Positions 12,173 to 44,511 of a stretch of 64,000 bases of DNA are shown here, piece after piece. A program made the position numbers and the translations under genes. How positions within the stretch are numbered: the stretch's first letter is position 1; each line of letters opens with the position of its first letter. The stretch is from assembly GCA_964234715.1 (NCBI GenBank), contig OZ174278.1; one strand, written 5' to 3'. Below the pieces are notes generated by a model. The model saw only the letters and a list, made by a program, of their open reading frames with translations, had not been told where the DNA came from and searched no databases. This stretch comes from Podarcis melisellensis. Its lineage: Eukaryota.

Positions 12173-13457
12173 CATTATAGAAAAGAAGTGGCTGCCGAAT
12201 CTCCAGTTTTCAAGGAGATACCTTCTTTTTATGGTGCTAAGGAGGTCTGAGTGGCTTGACCCGCTCAATAAAAAACCCCACACGGGGGGGGGGGCTGCCC
12301 AGCCTCAGAGATTCTTATTTAGTTAGATGGGGAGAAGGGACAATTTCCGCCCTCCCTTCCCCACAGGTGGGCGGGGTTTGCGGCACTGAGTGGGGCTCAT
12401 CTGGGCGGGTGCCACCCACCTGCTTGGCCAGGGAGGACAATGGATGGCCAGCTAGGGGGTGGGCCTAAGGCCAAAAAAAAGAGGCTGACCCCCTTGTCCA
12501 AGCCTCTTTCACTGTTCTTCCTTCCAGGAAGCATGTTTCTATAGACCTGATAAGGTGATAATGACAGAGTGCTCAAGAGTAATAGGCCGCCTTAACCAAG
12601 ATTAAATCTTTTGTGTGTGTTTTCTTGAAATCTTTTGACTATTGCAAGTTGATAGGCAAAGACCAATAACTTAAGAGCTCTTGGCTCACAGACATGCTAA
12701 TGTAATGTCCTCTGGGCTGTCAGGTTTGGTGGTAATTGATAAAACATTCAAATGGAAGAACTCCAAAAGGCGACCTCCATCTTGTATCTTAGTACAGTAA
12801 TTTAAAAGCAACAATTATCAACATTATGCACAGAAATGTTTAGTGAATCAAAAAGAAAAAGAGGAAGGACTTAATAATTAGAAAAAGATGTCGCCATTAG
12901 AGGACATGGGTAGAAGGATAAAAGGTTGAAGAAGGTGATTTGCCTGCGTATCACTAAGAATGAGTAAAATTAAGCAATGTTGTACACTAAATTATAAAGT
13001 GTGTGTACAAATTACTTGCACTTTTGACCAGTTTGATATTTAAAAAGATATTTAGAAGTATAAGTAAGATATAAACAGAACTAAAAAGTAGGATCTTTCA
13101 ACTGTTCAGTAAAACTGCAAGAGATCCTATTCCTATAACAATTATAGCCACAAACAGTTTCCTAATGGAAAAAGAGTTAGGCACATAACAAAGAGAATTT
13201 ACACAGAAAATTAAAGTGTACAAGGTAGGGTGAGGGGAGGAATATATCAGAAATTCTTAGCAAAATGTTATTGTCCAGTATAGTTTCTCATATATCAGAA
13301 CATGAATTGTGAGTGGCTAGCCACCTGGACCTCCCACAAAACTAGGCTATATTGATTCCAGTAGGATTAAAATGTGGATAGATATGCAGCCTAAATTTGC
13401 AAAAGGAGGACACAGCATTTTTTGAGGAACCAAATTTTATGCAGTAGAATGCAATCA

Positions 13458-13850
<393 letters not shown>

Positions 13851-18323: not shown

Positions 18324-18410
18324 CTAAAGTCTCTTTACAACGCAACAGCCAGCCCTGTCATAGTGATTTACATCACAGACCTTGTTTTCCAAACAATGCA
18401 GAACCACTTC
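18324..18410 (-). pseudogene. Degenerate tandem duplicate of BCOR exon 11 ([28 protein letters not shown])
   Basis: 59/69 nt identical to the 5' end of exon 11; intact polypyrimidine/CAG acceptor at 18412-18411; in-frame TAG at 18326-18324. Confidence 0.85.
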
Positions 18411-21090: not shown

Positions 21091-22823
21091 TGGTAGTGGT
21101 GCTACCTAACCCCAGCTCAGACAGTCATTCCAGAAGCATAGAATGACCAATGGTGTCAAAAGCCCTTGAGAAATAAATTAGCGGCAACAGGAACATACTC
21201 TTCTGACTCTCTCCTAACAGGGTCACCCAAAGCAAGCCTACATCCCAACTGAAATGGAACTAAAAGATTGGTTTCACCCAGGATACCCAAGATCTGTCCT
21301 GCAACCCCACAAGAACCTTGCCCAAGAAGGAAACATTAGTGACTGACCAATTTCTATTTAGATTTTCTGAATCCACAGAGTGTTTCTTAAGGAGTGGTCT
21401 TAACACTATCGCCTTTTGACAGGTGGGGGGGGCCCACCCCCTCTTGCAAGGAGGCTTTAATCACCTCTCTGATGTGGTCAACCCTGCTGTTTTAAAAAAC
21501 CATGAGCATCAAGGGAGAAGAGCAGAAGTAGTTGCCCAAACCAAGTCAAGCACCTTGTCCATGTCCATAAGTCTTGCTAACTGAAACTCATCCCAACACA
21601 ACAAGACTAGAAAGTGCTCCATGATGCGGTGGAGAATGAAATTGTCTGTTGTGGCTTTAATCACTGGACTTTTCCCATATACAAGATGCCACATTGCCCT
21701 ACCACACAAGAAGTTAAATATATCACCACTACCTGTATTTCAGTTGCCACATTGCTATCTAGCCCCTCAACACAGGCTTCAACATACTGAACTGATTCTC
21801 TTCTCTTTTTCATCAAGGAAAAGGGGTACAGCAAATTGACTGCTTCTTGATTAAGGATCAGAACAGGTAAAGTTCTGATTGACTTGTGCTTGACTAAGCT
21901 CTATAACCACCACTGGAAGCAAGTCATTCCCATCATCCCTGGGGTTTATGGGAGCTGGAGTCCAGGAACATATGGAGGGCACCGGTTCCCCAGTCCACAC
22001 CCCTGCTTTTGAAGATCTCACATTTTATTGCTACAGGTAGAAGTAAACAAAACCTTTCCATAAAACAAAATTAACAGAAGGATTCATCAGGACCCATCCC
22101 CCGCCCTCTTTCTCTCTCTCTCTCTATATATAGCATTTTAAGGATGGCAGCACTCTTACAAGCAATGTCTAAAAATGTAGAAAGGAAAATAAACCCAAAG
22201 ACATAGGCACCTATAGAGCTGCTTTGCTAATAAGTCTGATCTCCAAACTATTTGTACATATGACTATTTTCACCTGAAGTCTGTAAGTCCCAGTGATTTA
22301 CCAGCTCTAAATGCCAGTTTGTTTTTCAAATATGGGAATGCATCACAAAATATATATTCATAACATTAAAATGCGAAGTTCAAAAGCAGCCCTGAAATGA
22401 AGCGTGTCCACACTCTCATGCTGCCAAAGCTGTGCTGGTAATTAACCTTCCTGAAATGTAGCATATATGTTAACTTTGGCTGTGTATCGGGGTATCTATC
22501 CCCATCCCCCACTACTTACTCACGATCCCCATCCTGCAAAGCACATCAAGAACTGACTTCTTATTGAAAATGACTGGCGCCTATTCAGGCTCAGGGTTAT
22601 TAACTTACAGGGGTTTATATTGTTTCTTTCCTAGCCCTGCTCACAAAATATACTAATTGCACGCTTGAATAAAGAAACAGAACAGAGAGCCTGGAGATAT
22701 TTCGACATGTTGAGAAGGAACACAAAGAGAGACTCCAACCACGTGCACAGTTAGAATTATGTGTGACACCAAGCATCTTCCACATTGTAATTCAGAGTAG
22801 TGAACTTCAGAAACAATGCTTGC

Positions 22824-22961
22824 CTCGTATCCCAGTCGGGCTGCCCTTTGCAGAAGAGTTTCTCCAGCGTTCTTATTGACAATAAGCCTTCGGGCTTCTG
22901 GCGGCATGGGACGACTTGGGGGAGTCTCCTGAGGGGCACTTGCAATCTGCAGCTGTGAGGG
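22824..22961 (-). CDS. BCOR: BCOR exon 10, frame-preserving form (138 nt; [46 protein letters not shown]), start of ankyrin repeats
   Basis: ORF 22653..23048 frame. Internal acceptor ttgcctgtctcttcag|CCC is phase 0; donor is GAG|gcaagc (GC). The 5' boundary is inferred. Confidence 0.8.
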
Positions 22962-23098
22962 CTGAAGAGACAGGCAATAATGAGGGACTCTGCTGCTGCA
23001 GGCGATTGTACAATGCCTGCTCATGTGATGTGACTGGCGAAGAGTCACAGTCTGAAGGAGCCTCTGGTCGCTTCCAGATTCTCCTCATTAACTATGAC
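22962..23098 (-). pseudogene. Frameshifted, apparently intronised 5' part of ancestral BCOR exon 10 (VIV / [17 protein letters not shown]...LLPVS)
   Basis: Homology to human [20 protein letters not shown]...LLPASQ is split across three reading frames. The old acceptor ttttgacag|GTC reads into TGA at 23047-23045. Confidence 0.7.
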
Positions 23099-23444
23099 CT
23101 GTCAAAATCATTACTGGATTCCACACCCCACCCATCCATCCTTAATAATTCATTGAAAATCCATTTTCCTTTCTCTCTCTTTTTAAAAGTGTAGTAGTGT
23201 TGGCTTCTAGATTTATACCATCTAAAAGTTTTAAGATCAAAATCCTGAAAGAATCTGAGGAACCCTCACAGATTTGTCCTGGAGTAAAGTGGATTGAGCA
23301 CTGCAGAACAATACAATGTGTTTTAAAGTAAACAGAAAGGGCTTGGAAGGGCCACTACATAAGACAACAAGCTAAGCGTTTAAAGTGGCTGATATTAGCC
23401 AAACCTGAAATATTAGCGGGACAACTGGGTTGGAATAAAGATAC

Positions 23445-23773
23445 CTTCTCCTCAGCACTTTCGAGATCAGTGACATCATCTCCTGTCAGGGATGACCTCC
23501 TTCTCCTCTCCTGCAGTGCCAAATGTTTTGTTTTACACTGACGTTTCCCTGGTGGCTTCTCACAGTCGCCATGTTTCTGCAGCAGGGATGCAGCTTGGAA
23601 ATCTTCTTCCTCGTCTGTGCACAGCACATCTGTCTTCCAGTTTTCTTTCATTTTCTGCTGCTTGGCAGCCAACCTTGAAACTGGAGTACAGCTTGGCTGG
23701 GCTTGCCTTTTGCTGTTTATATTGGTAGATGAAAGGGTCTTCATATGCGGAGATGCTGGGAATGGAGGGATAC
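23445..23773 (-). CDS. BCOR: BCOR exon 9 (329 nt; [11 protein letters not shown]...DLESAEEK)
   Basis: Acceptor ccccatttag|GT, donor GAGAAG|gtatct; phase 1 to 0; ORF 23355..23858. Confidence 0.93.
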
Positions 23774-26527
23774 CTAAATGGGGAGGAAAGGCATTGTACA
23801 TTGCATACTGTGTTGAAAGGAAAGAGAATACACACACCCACACCCCAATACATGACACATTATTTTAAAACTTTTACATTCGCATTAAGCAATTCCACAT
23901 TTGGACTATAAGCAATAAAAAGTAATTGTAATGGGCGGGTACATCTGCTAAGCAAAGTTTGATGTTCTGAGATCTAAGCACAGTAAACAACCACACAGTC
24001 TAGCACTGCACCATCTAAGCATCGTGGCAAAGGAGATATGAATCAGGCCTCCTTCTCAGGGTACTTGTTTATATGGATGCAGATGAGAGAAGAGGCTTCC
24101 TTACCTGTAATGACATGCTAGCAAAGTGGGAATATACTGCTCTTTCAGGTATAGAACTGCTGAAACCTTTCCACCTCAGGAAACCCATTTTTGCTTTTTG
24201 TAGAGCAGAGTGGAGTGTAAAATTCAATGGACACAGAAACGGTTTCCATAATCAGAAACGCTGGTTGAGTGCCCAATTCCCATTTCTGCCTTTGAAAAAG
24301 TCTCCCTTTGTGCACCAAAAATGAGGAAAGCATTGGGTCTGTTTCTTGCAGCATTCTGAAAAGGGATTCATGGACCCAAACAGCAATTTCTCAGTGTTAT
24401 ATGGCTCTTAACCATTAAGCAGCTGTCTCTCTTGTCTGCTGCATTGCAAGGACCTAACTTTCAAGAGTTGCCTTTTGCAAGGATGTCATGTACACAATCC
24501 AATCAGAAACAGGATATATTGACCCTAAGTGAACTTTTCAGCTTCTCTAAAATACCAACAATGCATTTCTCATAGCTTCAATGTTCATTCCACTTTTGTA
24601 ACATTCTACTGACCATGCCTGAAGAGAGAAAAGGATTCCCTAAGACATGAAGGAAATGTAAAGAAAGCAAAGAGGTTCATGATGAGTTTGTTTACATGAC
24701 AATTTTCAGGTAAGAGGAATCAGAACTAAACTTCTACAGAACCCAAAAAGGACCAACAACTGGAATGAATAAAAATGAATGACTAGCTGTGGTTTTAGAG
24801 TAAGAGCAGTATCTGAATTCACAGTGCATCAGATCAAGGTTTCTTAAATTCTGTTTCTGTAAGATCAAGCAATGTATGAATGGAATAGAAACCAAGGGCT
24901 TGACTCATGAGTCTGATCTGTCTATCTAATGAAGGATTCTCTCTCGTCTTAAAAAAACTTTTAAAAAAACATGTAAGAAAGTGGTGAATCCTCTAGCTGT
25001 TGTAGACTTAGGCCTAGTTTTCACCAGGGTGAAACTTGTGGCTGGACTTTTCAGGCAGGAAATAGGGGCTTGCACTTCAATGTTCCTCTGTTCCAAAAAT
25101 AAATAAATATCCCCATACCTGGAAAACTAGCATGTTGCAAAGAAGGCTCATTTTGCATATGATTGCTTTACGGGCGCAGGGAATCTTTTTGTATAGGAGA
25201 ACATTCAACAATTCAGATCTCTGCTCTCAATAGCAGAATGTTCTCCCATATAAAAACAAAAAACCAAAACTCTGCCTATCACGGTCTGAAATGGTAGAGG
25301 CCAAACTATGTGTTACATTAAATGCATGATTTGATTTGATATGTTTCAGGTTTTGTTTTGATTTTAACACACAGCAGCTGCAATCTGGAGCACAGCACAT
25401 GGGAAGGGCATTGACCCTTTCCCCCTGCACCACGGTCCTGATTAAAATCCCTCCCTCCTCCAGCTGCTATTTGCTCTTACAAGGAACCTGCTGTTGGTAC
25501 CTATAGCAGCTCTGAGGAGTGATATTAGTCAGAACAACAGTGCAAGGAGAAAGGGTTAAACAATAATTTAACATAACATATAATTTGACCCTCCGAAGCT
25601 CTTTCCTAAAGACCTGCTCCCAGTTGGAGATGAAATCTTATATTCCAATGTTATAGTAGGTTTCTATAGATTTTTATTGTGTATGACAGCTACATTGCTT
25701 GTCATTATATTTAAATTGTCATTTTATTTCCTGTGAACTGGTTTTCAGTACAATCTATGTGTAGAAGATGCAGTATGGACAAAACTGACGACGACTAATT
25801 AGGAAAGAGAAGAAAGAAGTGGTAAAGCAGGCTAGGTAGAAGAATTCAGCTAGTCTGCATTTAACCACAAAGTGGAAAAGATTTGGGAAAAGACACCTGT
25901 GCACCTTTCCTGGCATAAAAAGAATGGAACACAAGGAGACCACTTTCTTCCCTCCAGCTTTCCAGAGCAGGAAAAAATTAACTCAGAAGTTCAAACCTAA
26001 TGGAGCAGTGAATTCCCACAAGTGGTTAAAAGACGCAGTACTCTTCATACTGTCTTCCTTAATCTACACTCATTCATACGTGTCAAAAATTGTTATGAAA
26101 TCAAAATCATTCCTGACTGGTAAAGATGAAGGGGGGACTGTTATGAAGTCAAAAACTGTTAAGAATATCAAAAAGCAAAAATGACCAAAAAGAACCTACA
26201 GACAAAAATATTTTAGGTTTTTGGTATTCTCTCCCCCCCCACACCCCCAATTTGAAGCGGGGAGGGAATCACACGACACAGACAGCACACACATCTAGGA
26301 TGTGGCATTAAAACACAATTAGCACCACACACTACAGATTTGGCAAAACAAGCATAAGTGGTTTAATAGTGGCACTTTAAGTCCTTTATATGATCATAGT
26401 AAAATTTTATATTATATATATAATATAATATAAAACTTCTACCCAAAAAACTACCGACAGCTTCTTAGCACTGGTGGCAGCATGCGTCACTAAGTAATGC
26501 TAGATGTCCCTAGTAATCTCTGCATAC

Positions 26528-40019: not shown

Positions 40020-40405
40020 CTAGAAAGAGAATTGATATGGGGGAAAAAGACACCTCACAATAAGAACTACTTCATTTACCTTACCTTCTATGAAAAGTAT
40101 TTCCAAAAGAAAATATCTGCTCAAACCCAAAGTTTTGAGATACACACAATTCTATATAAAGTTTTAAAATGCCATATGTTCAATATGCAAGGCATGTAGT
40201 ATCTATACACAAATAATATACAGTTCTTCCATATATAAAAGTAAATAACATTATCTATATATATATATTTATTTATATATGTGTATTAAAAAGCATTGTC
40301 TTTTGAGAGGTATAACAAAGAAACAAAACATAAACTGTACAATGAATAAAGACGACCATGGCCCACAACTTCCCTTTGTGTACTTGGAAATGAAATTTTA
40401 ACTCA

Positions 40406-40553
40406 NNNNNNNNNNNNNNNNNNNNNNNNNNNNNNNNNNNNNNNNNNNNNNNNNNNNNNNNNNNNNNNNNNNNNNNNNNNNNNNNNNNNNNNNNNNNNNN
40501 NNNNNNNNNNNNNNNNNNNNNNNNNNNNNNNNNNNNNNNNNNNNNNNNNNNNN
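40406..40553. other. Assembly gap (148 N) between exons 4 and 6
   Basis: Run of N. Confidence 1.
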
Positions 40554-41140
40554 TCATCCATTTTTATAAGCATCAACTAATTCTTTCTTTTTTTAACAAC
40601 GCAAAACAATTTGGCTTAACTCATTCTTTCACAAATCTAAAAAATAACCTACAATACTTGCCATCATTCAACGTCAAATTCACTACAGCTTCTATTCCTT
40701 TAAGCTACATTTCTGCTTGGTAAAGAAGTTGCATTAAACCCGCTAACATATGGCTGCTACTCCTTTTTAATCAAATGTCCTGTATGAAATAATCATCAGA
40801 ACTTCTGCCTTTCCTTTGGTATTTAATAGTGCTAGCCAAACACAGGCAAGCTATAGCAAACTACCTTTAAAAACAAACATGTCATGCATTCTTCAGCTTC
40901 CTTTCACTACTACATGTTATGCTTATGAGATTAAATTATTTGTTACACCAATTAACTGCATATAATTCTTATCTATTAATGCTCCAATACCCCTGGCTTC
41001 ATAGCAGAACCCAAATATACACAAGATTACCACTGCTAGTTAAGTTCAAGATAGACTTATAGAGTTGTACATATTTCATTCTCAACTGTGAACTGTGTTT
41101 TCTTTAAAAACTGCTTTGGTAGTTAAGCCTCAGAACTCAC

Positions 41141-43945
41141 CTGCAGAGCCCGCTGTTCTCGACTAAGTTGGCTAGAATCTGCATACAGTTCTGTCGTAAC
41201 ACACTTGAATCGATCACCTACGTAACCAGCAGAGTTTGCGATTCTCTTTGCCAGGTTAGATGGCTTAGGTTTCAGGAATTTGCCGTCATTAGGTTCCGCG
41301 CCCTCAGTTCCCTCTTTGGCGTATGCCTGACTGACTTCCATACTTGACTGCGTGTTTCCCATACAAAGCTGTTTAGCATCATCTGGCATTTTGCAAAAGG
41401 ACATAGCTAGGCCATCGTTTCCGGGAGCAGCCTCCAAGAACCCAGAGGAAGTGGGAACCGTTAACCTCTCCCTATTCTGGCTCAAGGAAAGGTCCTCTTT
41501 CCTTAAGTTGAACATTGATGGGTGTGGGCTCTGGGCTTGCTTGAAGTTATAAACTTCATGGAAATTGCTTCTCCCACAGTCTTCCCTCATCACAATGAAA
41601 TCTCTGTGGGGGAAGCCTTGTTCTACCTTGTGCTTTGTGGGGTCGCTTGCTTGATTACTGCTTTCAACAGGAAAGCTAGGTTTCGTCAGGTTCGTTTCAC
41701 CTTTCACATCTTGCTCCTCTCTTGGTTCTGCAAACAGGTGCTTGTCACTTTTGGTAGTATTTTTACCATGACTTGAACTTTGGTGCAATTTCGCGTTTCT
41801 GTCTGCAGGTACTTCAAAATGTAGTTTTGTGCTGGTTTCCAGCATCTCGGGCAATCGGTTTCTCAAGGCTGGGTCTTCATAACGGAGCCGTTCATGCGAT
41901 CTAGACCTCCTTTCCGATTTCTCATCTTTCAGCTCCAAAGCTGTATGGGGTAACAGCATTGGGTGTACCATACCCATACCCAAAGCATCCTGGTAGGTCA
42001 TGAACTCACCTCTGCTGGCTGGCAGGCTGTATGGAATGGTAGGTTTGGGAGCTAGATGTCCAGGGAAAAGACTCCCATTGGGTAACAGAACAGGGTGAGG
42101 ATATACAGGTCCTTTCCCATGTAGAGACAAAGGGCCTATAGCTAAGCCTTCTGGAACTGGATATGGGAGATAGCTTCTCGGATAGGGCAATGGTGGAGAT
42201 CGGAATGCATCATTGGGAGGGAAAAATATGGAAGTTGGTGCAAGGGTGTTCTCATTTGCTTTGAAGATAGGTTCTGGATTATTGCATTTAGCTGCCTTAT
42301 TACTATGCTTTGAAGACGCTGCTGCTAAAGGTTGTCCTATGTGCTGTATGACAGATGCAGTGGTCTCTACTGAGCTAGTCGTCTTAGGGCAATCGACATT
42401 GGCATTTGGAGCAGGAGAAGCAGATGCTGGGCGACCTCCGCTTGATACAGACCCTGAAATATTACTGACAACTGCTTCTGTACCCCCCATCCTAGGGCAA
42501 GAAGAACTCCGCTGTTGTGGCGTCACCCAGTCCAATGCTTTGTTTTTCAACTGCATGTTTTTACCACCGTTATCTTCATTGGGACCTGGACCAGGAACAA
42601 CCCAGGAGGAAGGCGCCGTGCTGATTATTTCAGGTCTATAGACAGGGCAACCACTTCCAGGAGAAATGGTTTCTTTTGGAAGATCACCTCCAGGTAAAAC
42701 CAAGCCACTTCCGGCCCTGCTATGAACCAGCACAGTTGGCGCCATTTTCTTAACATGATCAGATTTGGTTGTCTCCATGTCAACAACTTTTGATGACAAA
42801 TCCAATGGTTTGTCTATAATCTCTTTGGTAACAGTTTGTTGTTTTTCTAACAGTGGAGGGGATCTGCTGTCCTTCCTGTCGTGACCTGTTTTCCTTGCAT
42901 GCACTGTAGGCTGCTGAGAGATTTCGCCTGTGTCGTGTGTTTTAGGAGCTTTCCCCCCGGAGACTCTTGGAGGAAACTCATTGCTTACATTCACGTATGG
43001 CTTTGGGAGTGTAACTGAAGAAGGAGACGTTGAAATCCTGGAAAAGTGTTTCTGAAACTCCGAGTAAGCGTCCCCAACCTGCGTTGGGAGGTGAACTCTA
43101 GGTGATGGTCTCGGCGAATGAGACAAGAGAACAGTGGGGTCTGTTGGCATATTACTAGCCGCTGGCTTTGCAGATGGGACTCTGGGAGGCTTGCTGTTCT
43201 GGATATGTGGATAGGCATGAGAGTCCACAGGAGTTCCGGGACCGACTCCCATCTTCCAAGACAAACTCTTTTCTGGACAGTGTCCTAGAGGGGGAATAGC
43301 TGGAGCTGCAGTTGCAGCAGAGATCCTCATTGGTGAAGCTAACGATGACGGAATGTGGGGAGCAACATAATGAGAAGGTGGCAAGTATAAAAAACGTTCA
43401 CCATTTGTACATACGGGCGAGTAGGTCAGATGCTGTGGCAAGCTGTAATTGGACTGCTGAGGTAGCAAGGCCTTATACATGTTCAACGAATACTTATTTG
43501 GTGATTCGAGAAAAGGATAAATAGCACCCTCCATGTAAGGATTTACCCAGGGTAGCCTTAGGTAACTAGCACCATTGACATTGAGAGGACTCGGTTTGTC
43601 ACTTGAGCTTCTGTCCAAGCCTAAGGTCTCCCCAGTCGGAAGCGAACTTTTTTGTATTCCAGGTGGCGTTTTGTACATAGCACTGAAGCCATTTGGGGGT
43701 TTTCCAGCTGCATTTTCAATTGCTTCAGTGGGATTAGACTTGAACTGCATCTCTGGATTTCTTTCAGGAGCAAATCCAAGGCCAGCAATAGCACTTGTAG
43801 CGTCCCGGGGCTTGTCTGAGCCAAGTCCACATAAACTGGAATAGACAATACTGCTGGGGACTCTAAGCCCTTCCCGCATAAGTCCAGACCGGTCCATGCT
43901 CAGAGCTGCAAGGCTGTCAATGCGATGCACTGCCGTGGCATCCAC
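41141..43945 (-). CDS. BCOR: BCOR exon 4 (2805 nt, 935 codons); contains PLDLS CtBP motif (42794-42808) and BCL6-binding peptide (42587-42637)
   Basis: ORF track 41123..43978; acceptor cacaaag|GTGGAT, donor CTGCAG|gtgagt; extensive identity to BCOR. Confidence 0.98.
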
Positions 43946-44511
43946 CTTTGTGAAATAAGAGAGAGGTGACTTTGGCATTTAATCAAGTACTATTCAAGGC
44001 TACAGGTACTTAAAAAAAAACATGGCGGGAAACAAAAGGAAGCAAATACATTGTTTTCATTGTGAAAAACTAATGTGGGCTGATTAAACTGATAAATGCA
44101 GAGGAATAAAGTAAATCAAATTTTAAAATTTTAGCCTGCTTCATTCTTCTGTCTGTGGAGTCTGAGTCCTGCCAAGTTTGATTATTATTTTTTAAGTAAG
44201 ATTAGTTTAATAGGTCTCTAGATCCTTTCATACTTAGCAAAACATCTACATGGATTTTAGGATAATATCCTTAAATCTTTGCTACTCAACCAACTGTCCC
44301 ATTTAAAAAAATTGATTTCCAGAACCATGTGTGTACTCGCTTCCAACAAGGGACATTTCATAAGGTATGCTTCCGGGGGGGGGGGGGACACCCTCAGATG
44401 CAAAGTTATTTATATTCCAAAAATCATTTAAATCAAATAATGACACTGAGTCTTTTTTTTTTTTTTTACTTCTGTTCCTCTGCTTATTGATAGCCAAAAT
44501 AAGTGATATTT

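What the first reader, a model, noticed from the sequence alone, without database searches (positions are those of the whole stretch)
22824..23150. BCOR exon 10 appears half-intronised: two frameshifts in the ancestral 5' half, rescued by a new internal in-frame acceptor
Seen: from the ancestral-position acceptor (ttttgacag|GTC ATA GTT at 23098), homology to human [20 protein letters not shown]...LLPASQ-STQL runs through three frames. It needs a 4-nt insertion (AATG) after VIV and a 1-nt insertion (T) in GTC TCT T CAG. The 275-nt exon is out of frame and hits TGA at 23047-23045. The extra T sits within ctcattattgcctgtctcttcag|CCC, which has a branch-like CTCAT about 20 nt upstream, a pyrimidine tract and CAG. 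This acceptor is phase 0 and gives a 138-nt exon that restores the full ORF into the ankyrin repeats and PUFD. Upstream of the old acceptor the sequence is purine/G-run rich (ggatggatgggtggggtgtgg), so its pyrimidine tract is poor. The Trp codon TGG where human has Arg fits CpG decay under relaxed constraint. Inference: a lineage-specific 3' splice-site shift deleted about 45 aa, including a basic RRxxKRP patch, from a conserved dosage-sensitive PRC1.1 subunit. The old acceptor may now yield a nonsense-mediated decay (NMD) poison isoform.
Basis: partly seen in the sequence, partly recalled or inferred. Interest (0 to 1): 0.78.

Follow-up and report, generated by a model that had tools for sequence, protein, structure and literature searches.

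The report
Squamate-wide BCOR exon 10 shortening
In this wall-lizard BCOR gene the first half of exon 10 really is frameshifted and spliced out, but all eight lizards and snakes examined share this state, it uses a splice site that turtles and crocodiles also use, and the discarded half is still unusually well conserved.

Summary
Homology to the long sauropsid exon 10 runs through three frames. An independent DNA run of the same species and a sister species show no indel there. RNA joins the exon 9 donor (23445) only to 22961: one assembled contig plus 9 raw reads, with zero depth over the old 5' half. This gives a 138-nt exon with a GC donor.

- **Not lacertid-specific.** Eight squamate genomes (gecko, skink, monitor, iguanian, amphisbaenian, two snakes, Podarcis) share the same +1, +3 and +1 changes. 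Every squamate gene model seen has the short exon. The event therefore dates to the squamate stem.
- **The acceptor is not new.** Turtle and crocodile annotations carry both long (+44 aa) and short isoforms that use the same site.
- **The relic is not decaying freely.** Across six lizard lineages it evolves as slowly as coding exon 9, at about 3.4 to 4 times below the flanking-intron rate. Changes fall evenly on all ancestral codon positions, so the constraint acts on the nucleotide sequence, not on a protein.

A poison isoform from the old acceptor is possible but got no RNA support. No published description was found in the papers searched, so I class it as a new member of a known kind, of moderate interest.

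The parts
23445..23775 (-). BCOR exon 9, ending ...SAEEK in phase 0. The donor GT is at 23444-23443.
   Evidence: RNA contig piece 23445-23775 and read depth. ORF.
22962..23444 (-). Intron 9 as actually spliced (483 nt, GT..AG). It contains the relic.
   Evidence: Joint 22961/23445 'skips 483, CT..AC' in the X15 contig (depth 37.9) and in 9 X23 reads with 8 starts.
23099..23107 (-). Ancestral (upstream) exon 10 acceptor ttttgacag, with AG at 23100-23099. It has a weak, purine-rich tract upstream.
   Evidence: Same position as the turtle long-exon acceptor. The motif is present in 8 of 8 squamates. No RNA use was seen.
22962..23098 (-). Relic of the long-isoform-specific 5' extension of exon 10 (137 nt; 132 nt and coding in turtle). 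Now intronic and frameshifted, but constrained.
   Evidence: Frames. Alignment. Rates. No codon periodicity. Zero RNA depth.
23090..23091 (-). Frameshift site 1: one extra T (GTCATAGTTAAT against turtle GTCACGG-TAAC).
   Evidence: MAFFT alignment of nine species. Shared by all squamates; Candoia and Crotalus carry further small deletions in this stretch.
23045..23047 (-). TGA, the first stop reached if the old acceptor is used.
   Evidence: Translation from 23098. Hand translation of the alignment gives the same TGA in Gekko, Sceloporus and Tiliqua, and other premature stops in Rhineura, Varanus and Candoia.
22965..22966 (-). Frameshift site 2: one extra T in the pyrimidine tract (CTCTTCAG against turtle CTCTCAG).
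   Evidence: Shared by all eight squamates.
22962..22984 (-). Internal acceptor: branch-like CTCAT (22984-22980), pyrimidine tract, and AG at 22963-22962.
   Evidence: Used in RNA. 95% mean pairwise identity among lizards and 91% to turtle over the last 37 nt of the relic.
22824..22961 (-). Exon 10 as used (138 nt, 46 aa, PSQLQIAS...RAARLGYE; phase 0 at both ends).
   Evidence: RNA contig piece 22823-22961 and read depth. Identical boundary in all Podarcis and other squamate gene models.
22822..22823 (-). GC donor of intron 10 (GAG|GCAAGC), a GC-AG intron of about 9 kb.
   Evidence: Loose ends at 22823 continue with the start of exon 11. GCAAG is conserved in all nine sauropsids.
13590..13787 (-). 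Start of exon 11 ([10 protein letters not shown]...), with acceptor ...ttttccag.
   Evidence: Sequence matches the loose-end consensus. tblastn.

Best explanation
The window is the BCOR gene of a Podarcis wall lizard, on the minus strand.

**Ancestral state.** Judged from turtles and a crocodile against squamates, the sauropsid ancestor had two alternative acceptors for exon 10. An upstream one gave a 270-nt exon. An internal one gave a 138-nt exon that lacks 44 aa.

**What changed.** In the squamate stem, two +1 insertions, plus an in-frame +3, destroyed the reading frame of the 132-nt extension. That stem is roughly 200 million years old or more by published divergence dates, quoted from general knowledge. 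Only the internal acceptor can now give a productive mRNA. It is used apparently constitutively: exon 9 (23445) joins to 22961.

**Shown.** These steps are shown: the frames, the reality of the indels, the junction, the sharing across squamates, the dual isoforms in the outgroups, and the slow evolution of the relic.

**Inferred.** The relic and the old acceptor are kept by selection as a cis-acting RNA signal for exon 10 splicing. The relic holds the branch point and pyrimidine tract of the acceptor in use. Beyond these, it probably acts as an intronic enhancer or structure, or as a decoy or poison acceptor, for an exon that also depends on a weak GC donor. My odds:
- enhancer or structure role: about 0.35
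- residual poison or truncating use of the old acceptor: about 0.3
- another non-coding function: about 0.2
- no function: about 0.1
For: - **Identity.** The exon 4 translation is 99-100% identical to Podarcis BCOR models. The public Podarcis and turtle models carry the Pfam BCOR, Ank and PUFD domains.
- **DNA.** Runs X4 and X12 show no indel against the window.
- **RNA.** One 2115-nt contig and 9 reads join 23445 to 22961. Depth is zero over 22996-23435.
- **Gene models.** All squamate models seen carry the short exon, including the longest isoforms. They span Gekkota, Scincoidea, Lacertoidea, Anguimorpha, Iguania and Serpentes.
- **Outgroups.** Long and short isoforms are both annotated in more than nine turtle species and in Crocodylus porosus. 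Bird models in the lists are long.
- **Shared changes.** The nine-species DNA alignment shows the same +1, +3 and +1 in all eight squamates.
- **Rates.** Tree length over six lizard lineages is 0.375 for the relic and 0.336 for exon 9. It is 1.286 for mid intron 9 and 1.516 for distal intron 10.
- **Invariant columns.** 94 of 130 in the relic against 64 of 193 in mid intron 9, Fisher 5e-12. The relic is not different from exon 9, p = 0.18.
- **Local peak.** Podarcis, Sceloporus and Gekko are 100% identical in the 50-nt window across the old acceptor.
- **No coding signature.** Variable sites in the relic fall 15/14/12 over ancestral codon positions, against 2/3/13 in the short exon.
Against: - **Thin RNA sample.** RNA evidence comes from one contig assembly and one raw-read run of a close relative or the same species (coded organism G). 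With 9 junction reads, old-acceptor use below roughly 25-30% cannot be excluded. An NMD target would be rarer still.
- **Read filter.** The tool removes human-like reads without notice, so zero depth alone is weak evidence. The positive junction evidence is not affected.
- **Annotation only.** The turtle and crocodile short isoforms are annotation models. I did not see their reads.
- **Gaps in sampling.** No tuatara, mammal or amphibian DNA was examined. 'Stem squamate' rests on Gekko plus seven other squamates, and 'ancestral alternative acceptor' rests on turtles plus one crocodile.
- **Alignment quality.** Intron alignments at this depth are imperfect. That would bias intron rates downward, which makes the contrast conservative.
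- **Tolerated insertion.** In Crotalus a roughly 360-nt SINE-like insertion splits the relic, so the relic need not be contiguous in every lineage.
- **Unidentified function.** The function of the constraint is not identified. The consensus fold shows no covariation.
Confidence: 0.8

Rival explanations
1. One reading: a recent, lacertid-level 3' splice-site shift onto a newly created acceptor. The old half is decaying under relaxed constraint.
For: The frames, the stop and the acceptor in use are as described.
Against: The same frameshifts occur in Gekko, Tiliqua, Varanus, Sceloporus, Rhineura, Candoia and Crotalus. The same acceptor gives annotated short isoforms in turtles and a crocodile. 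The relic evolves 3.4 to 4 times more slowly than flanking intron.
Confidence: 0.03
2. Assembly or sequencing artefact: the two single-base insertions are errors and the long exon is intact.
For: Single-base indels are a common error class in long-read assemblies.
Against: The independent run X4 and sister species X12 agree with the window, base for base, at both sites. Seven other genomes from different projects share both insertions. RNA skips the region.
Confidence: 0.01
3. The relic is a maintained poison acceptor. A fraction of transcripts uses 23098 or 23091 and hits a premature stop (TGA 23047-23045, or later stops in exon 10). These transcripts are then removed by nonsense-mediated decay, or they give a BCOR that lacks the ankyrin repeats and PUFD. 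Either outcome would tune the dosage of a dosage-sensitive PRC1.1 subunit.
For: The old acceptor motif is kept in 8 of 8 squamates, and local conservation peaks across it. By hand translation of the alignment, each of the six old-acceptor reading frames checked ends in a premature stop despite lineage-specific indels; Crotalus was not checked. The same gene has a second squamate-wide stop-carrying pseudo-exon in intron 10. That pseudo-exon matches the C-terminus of an annotated Heteronotia isoform.
Against: No read and no contig uses the old acceptor. No annotated squamate isoform among those seen uses it. Premature stops are also what chance would give in a frameshifted sequence. The old acceptor has a poor pyrimidine tract.
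Confidence: 0.3
4. The relic is neutral DNA that merely decays slowly, for example through a locally low mutation rate or its position next to an exon.
For: Proximal intron 10 is also fairly conserved, with tree length 0.605. The last 40 nt of the relic must hold the branch point and pyrimidine tract. Lineage-specific indels do accumulate: Varanus +2, Sceloporus +12, Rhineura -7, and a SINE in Crotalus.
Against: Mid intron 9 lies less than 300 nt away and evolves 3.4 times faster. The best-conserved part is the far end of the relic, around the old acceptor, not only the part next to the acceptor in use.
Confidence: 0.1

Closest known systems
Alternative 3' splice site of BCOR exon 10 in turtles and crocodilians (annotated long and short isoforms, for example Chelonia mydas 1648 against 1604 aa and Crocodylus porosus 1772 against 1728 aa)
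   Same: The same two acceptor positions and the same 46-aa short exon starting PSQLQIAS. The same GC donor occurs in the one turtle genome read.
   Different: In turtles and crocodiles the 132-nt extension is an open, in-frame coding segment of 44 aa. In squamates it is frameshifted twice, so the choice is no longer between two proteins.
Unproductive splicing coupled to nonsense-mediated decay through conserved poison exons or splice sites, as described for SR-protein genes (recalled from general knowledge, not checked here)
   Same: An alternative splice site whose use brings in a premature stop, embedded in sequence conserved far above the neutral rate.
   Different: No transcript using the site was seen. 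Conservation is at the level of a coding exon within squamates, not ultraconserved across amniotes. NMD sensitivity was not tested.
Known mammalian BCOR isoforms (34-aa AF9-binding segment and others; review PMC13703134)
   Same: In-frame internal segments of BCOR are included or skipped, which changes its interaction surfaces.
   Different: The known segments lie elsewhere. Neither the review nor the preprint searched has any hit for the terms used for an exon 10 acceptor choice or for a localisation signal in this 44-aa segment.
Exon-11-like pseudo-exon with an in-frame stop in BCOR intron 10
   Same: A squamate-wide element in the same gene that would truncate BCOR before the ankyrin repeats and PUFD.
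   Different: It arose by duplication, not by frameshift of an existing alternative region. It also appears in an annotated transcript, Heteronotia binoei isoform X5.

Membership tests
BCOR orthologue (BCL-6 corepressor, PRC1.1 subunit) | Pfam BCOR (PF15808), ankyrin repeats and a C-terminal PUFD (PF16553) in one protein, with top hits being BCOR of related species | tested here: met
   Exon 4 is 99-100% identical to Podarcis BCOR models. The Podarcis muralis X1 model scores PF15808 at 5.6e-81 and PUFD at 2.9e-53, and also matches Ank. A PUFD-like ORF lies at 2350-2646 in the window.
Alternative 3' splice-site pair inherited from the sauropsid ancestor | Both acceptors are present at homologous positions in outgroups, and both isoforms are annotated there | tested here: met
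   Pelodiscus DNA has both AGs in place. Long and short models occur in many turtles and in Crocodylus porosus. The reads behind those models were not seen.
Constitutive use of the internal acceptor in Podarcis | Junction reads from the exon 9 donor go to 22961 and not to 23098, 23091, 22952 or 22946 | tested here: met
   One contig (depth 37.9) and 9 reads with 8 starts. No other joint is listed, and depth over the relic is zero. The sample size limits this to 'at least about 70% of transcripts'.
Poison splice site / AS-NMD element | The alternative site is detectably used in RNA | tested here: not met
   No read or contig in the two RNA runs laid. Depth is too low to exclude rare use.
Poison splice site / AS-NMD element | Use of the site brings in a stop more than about 50 nt upstream of the last exon junction | tested here: met
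   TGA at 23047-23045 in exon 10 of a 15-exon gene. Hand translation of the alignment gives premature stops in six of the seven other squamates; Crotalus was not checked.
Poison splice site / AS-NMD element | Sequence conservation above the local neutral rate | tested here: met
   Tree length 0.375 against 1.286 and 1.516. 72% invariant columns against 33%.
Poison splice site / AS-NMD element | The transcript is stabilised when NMD is blocked | not testable with these tools
   This needs cycloheximide treatment or UPF1 knock-down in squamate cells.
GC-AG intron | GC at intron positions +1 and +2 with a strong flanking consensus, used in RNA | tested here: met
   GAG|GCAAGC at 22823-22822. The loose ends of one contig and 6 reads continue into exon 11. 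Conserved in nine sauropsids.
Conserved RNA structure | Compensatory base changes that support a consensus helix | tested here: inconclusive
   RNAalifold pairs the old acceptor (23103-23091) with the internal pyrimidine tract (22981-22969), but 0 of 45 pairs covary. The single-sequence z-score is -2.76.

The most novel reading that the evidence does not exclude
When the squamate ancestor lost the coding frame of the long exon 10 isoform, the dead extension was not discarded. It was converted into a regulatory cassette kept for about 200 million years. This cassette is a decoy or poison acceptor. Together with the squamate-specific stop-carrying copy of exon 11 in intron 10, it tunes how much full-length, PUFD-containing BCOR is made. 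That would be a datable case of a protein-isoform switch turning into a dosage switch in a Polycomb subunit.
Probability: 0.25. Interest if true: 0.65.

Novelty: new member of a known kind. Interest (0 to 1): 0.45.

Why it matters
BCOR is a dosage-sensitive PRC1.1 subunit. All lizard and snake models seen make it without a 44-aa segment that turtles, crocodiles and birds encode. That segment contains a basic patch and the end of the Pfam BCOR domain, and turtles and crocodiles can include or skip it. Squamates are therefore a natural knock-out of the long isoform, which could help work out what the segment does.

The relic is also a clean, datable example of an alternative coding region that lost its frame yet stayed under selection as nucleotide sequence. 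That bears on how splicing-regulatory and poison elements originate.

In practical terms the finding is not an assembly fault, and existing gene models already handle it correctly.

Tried and rejected
- **Look-ups that gave nothing.** A look-up of a short isoform (P0004) found nothing, because only the longest product of a gene is indexed. DNA for Podarcis lilfordi X1 was withheld, so the window itself served for Podarcis.
- **A productive long isoform by another route.** An acceptor at 23091 puts the RRxWKRP frame in phase, but the second +1 leads to a stop inside exon 10. I found no in-frame micro-exon and donor combination by hand inspection of the sequence.
- **The 71-aa ORF at 22873-23088.** This ORF starts at the ATG in the relic. 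It is interrupted in Gekko.
- **Residual coding constraint.** No codon periodicity was found.
- **Conserved RNA structure.** A helix is predicted but shows no covariation.
- **CpG-decay origin of the Trp codon.** The turtle codon is AGA.
- **Literature.** One search and two papers give no description of this acceptor choice or segment.
- **Tuatara.** It did not appear among cluster representatives or listed members. I ran no further search on it, nor the large representative search.
- Searches used exon 4 by reference and public protein ids. The N run near 40.3-40.5 kb was left as it is.

Full report
**What is in the window.** The minus strand carries BCOR. The large exon 4 ORF (41123-43978) is 99-100% identical to Podarcis BCOR models. 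A PUFD-like ORF sits at 2350-2646. DNA for the P. lilfordi model was withheld by the look-up tool. Exon 4 differs equally little from the P. lilfordi and P. muralis models, so I say only 'Podarcis'.

**Checking the observation.**
- From the old acceptor (AG 23100-23099) the frame gives VIV and then 14 unrelated residues up to the TGA at 23047-23045.
- The second frame carries the homology RRxWKRPE...LLPVS.
- The third frame gives PSQLQIAS...RAARLGYE from 22961 to 22824.
- Exon 9 ends in phase 0 at 23445.

**Are the indels real?** I laid four public runs on 22600-23900.
- An independent DNA run of the same organism (X4) covers the whole stretch in one contig. It differs only by intronic substitutions and has no indel.
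- A close relative (X12) likewise has no indel in exon 10.
- So the frameshifts are not assembly errors.

**Which acceptor is used?**
- An RNA contig of 2115 nt (X15, depth 37.9) joins 23445 to 22961, skipping 483 nt with GT..AG ends. Nine raw reads with eight different starts (X23) show the same joint.
- Depth is zero from 22996 to 23435 in both runs, and no other joint is listed.
- Downstream, the contig and six reads leave the window at 22823. They continue with letters that match the start of exon 11 at 13787.
- Exon 10 is therefore 22824-22961, which is 138 nt, and intron 10 has a GC donor (GAG|GCAAGC).
- Caveats: the RNA comes from coded organism G, which is at least 99% identical here. 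Nine reads bound old-acceptor use only to below about 25-30%. The tool silently drops human-like reads, so the zero depth is weaker evidence than the positive junctions.

**Is it lineage-specific?** I searched exon 4 by reference and then a public Podarcis protein.
- The hits included about 100 squamate BCOR models and members from geckos, skinks, cordylids, lacertids, an amphisbaenian, a monitor, iguanians and snakes. All of them, including the longest isoforms (1707-1732 aa), read ...EEK|PSQLQIAS.
- Anolis and Sceloporus read ...EEK|LQT instead.
- Turtles have both forms: ...EDK|[13 protein letters not shown]...LLPVSQ|PSQLQIAS and ...EDK|PSQLQIAS, 44 aa apart, in more than nine species and in two annotation pipelines.
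- Crocodylus porosus also has a short isoform (P0227) beside the long ones.
- The bird models listed are long.
- So the internal acceptor is an old alternative site, not a new one.

**Genomic comparison.** I fetched the BCOR loci of seven further squamates: Sceloporus, Gekko, Crotalus, Rhineura, Varanus, Tiliqua and Candoia. I also fetched the turtle Pelodiscus.
- In the nine-way alignment the turtle long exon is 270 nt and open.
- All eight squamates share one extra T just after the old acceptor, an in-frame CAG, and one extra T in the pyrimidine tract before the internal CAG.
- Because Gekko shares both shifts with the other seven squamates, they date to the squamate stem. Published divergence dates, quoted from general knowledge, put that at about 200 million years or more.
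- Lineage-specific extras exist. Varanus has +2, Sceloporus +12, Rhineura -7, and Candoia -3 and -1. In Crotalus a roughly 360-nt SINE-like insertion flanked by a short duplication lies 30 nt into the relic. The old acceptor survives upstream of that insertion.
- In Sceloporus the internal CAG has become CAA, and the next CAG 9 nt downstream fits the protein model.

**The surprise: the relic is conserved.**
- Sliding identity between Podarcis and Gekko is 0.4-0.7 in mid intron 9. It rises to 1.00 in the 50 nt across the old acceptor and stays at 0.84-0.96 through the relic.
- With a fixed species tree, tree length over six lizard lineages is as follows:

| Region | Tree length |
|---|---|
| Relic | 0.375 |
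| Coding exon 9 | 0.336 |
| Short exon 10 | 0.152 |
| Mid intron 9 | 1.286 |
| Distal intron 10 | 1.516 |
| Proximal intron 10 | 0.605 |

- Invariant columns are 94 of 130 in the relic and 64 of 193 in mid intron 9 (Fisher 5e-12). The relic cannot be told apart from exon 9, p = 0.18.
- Variable sites in the relic fall 15/14/12 on ancestral codon positions, against 2/3/13 in the short exon. The constraint is therefore on the nucleotide sequence, not on a protein.
- This contradicts 'relaxed constraint'.

**What the constraint might be.**
- The last 37 nt hold the branch-like CTCAT and the pyrimidine tract of the acceptor in use. They are 95% identical among lizards and 91% identical to turtle.
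- The rest, including the old AG, has no proven role.
- A consensus fold pairs the old acceptor (23103-23091) with the internal tract (22981-22969), and the turtle sequence is complementary at the same place. Every pair is invariant, however, so this neither supports nor refutes the structure. The single-sequence z-score is -2.76.
- By hand translation of the alignment, use of the old acceptor would end in a premature stop in Podarcis and in the six other squamates checked. No read, contig or annotated isoform shows such use.
- I therefore rate an enhancer, structure or decoy role slightly above a true poison isoform, and cannot separate them here.

**Consequence for the protein.** Pfam's BCOR domain matches profile positions 1-219 in the turtle long form but only 1-197 in Podarcis. 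Squamate BCOR therefore lacks the end of that domain and the basic RRxRKRP patch. The review and the preprint I read have no hit for an exon 10 acceptor choice or for a localisation signal. They discuss the 34-aa AF9-binding segment instead.

**Seen in passing.**
- I find it at 18336-18410 and at the matching place in all eight squamates, but not in the turtle.
- Its reading [28 protein letters not shown]-stop is exactly the C-terminus of the annotated Heteronotia binoei isoform X5.
- That pseudo-exon is therefore spliced in at least one gecko model.
- So squamate BCOR does carry a conserved truncating element, which is circumstantial support for the poison reading of the relic.

**Verdict.** The feature is real, ancient and already reflected in gene models. 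The unreported parts are its squamate-wide dating, its origin from an ancestral alternative acceptor, and the selection still acting on the dead half.

Noticed in passing
window 18336-18410 (minus strand); also L002 34484-34606, L007 32282-32404, L005 31741-31815, L006 35391-35459, L001 27539-27604, L003 18057-18131, L008 24944-25018: An exon-11-like pseudo-exon in intron 10 is present in all eight squamates and was not found in the turtle locus. In Gekko and Tiliqua it ends in the same in-frame stop (...CCIVKRL-stop). That reading is identical to the C-terminus of the annotated Heteronotia binoei BCOR isoform X5 (P0238, 1464 aa). It therefore looks like a conserved truncating or poison exon.
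   Followed up: partly
window 22822-22823 (minus strand): Intron 10 is a GC-AG intron. The donor GAG|GCAAG is used in RNA and is conserved in all nine sauropsids aligned, including the turtle. The first 250 nt or so of intron 10 are also well conserved among squamates.
   Followed up: partly
L003 about 13144-13504 (Crotalus tigris): A roughly 360-nt SINE-like insertion, flanked by a short duplication (AACTAGAG), splits the exon 10 relic 30 nt after the old acceptor. Candoia lacks this insertion.
   Followed up: partly
L001 about 23270-23285 (Sceloporus); protein models of Anolis and Sceloporus: In Sceloporus the internal acceptor CAG has become CAA, and the next CAG 9 nt downstream is used. 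Anolis and Sceloporus proteins therefore start exon 10 with LQT and lack PSQ. The agamids Pogona and Phrynocephalus keep PSQ.
   Followed up: partly
window 23091-23103 with 22969-22981 (minus strand): The old acceptor (GACAGGTCATAGT) is complementary to the pyrimidine tract of the internal acceptor (ATTATTGCCTGTC). The turtle has the same complementarity. All pairs are invariant, so there is no covariation test.
   Followed up: partly
window 22662-22811: A 155-nt low-depth contig (3.7 against 37.9 for the exons) from the RNA-like run X15 lies in intron 10 just after the GC donor. The raw-read run X23 shows nothing there. It may be unspliced precursor RNA.
   Followed up: no
proteins P0198, P0194, P0014, P0267, P0272: Several squamates have an annotated BCOR isoform of about 1617 aa that ends at ...NIQVSLSQG and lacks the PUFD. 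Rhineura X1 (P0195) has 21 extra residues somewhere outside exon 10.
   Followed up: no
window about 40400-40560: A run of N lies in the intron just downstream of exon 4. It shows up as X's in an ORF listed at 40273-40557.
   Followed up: no
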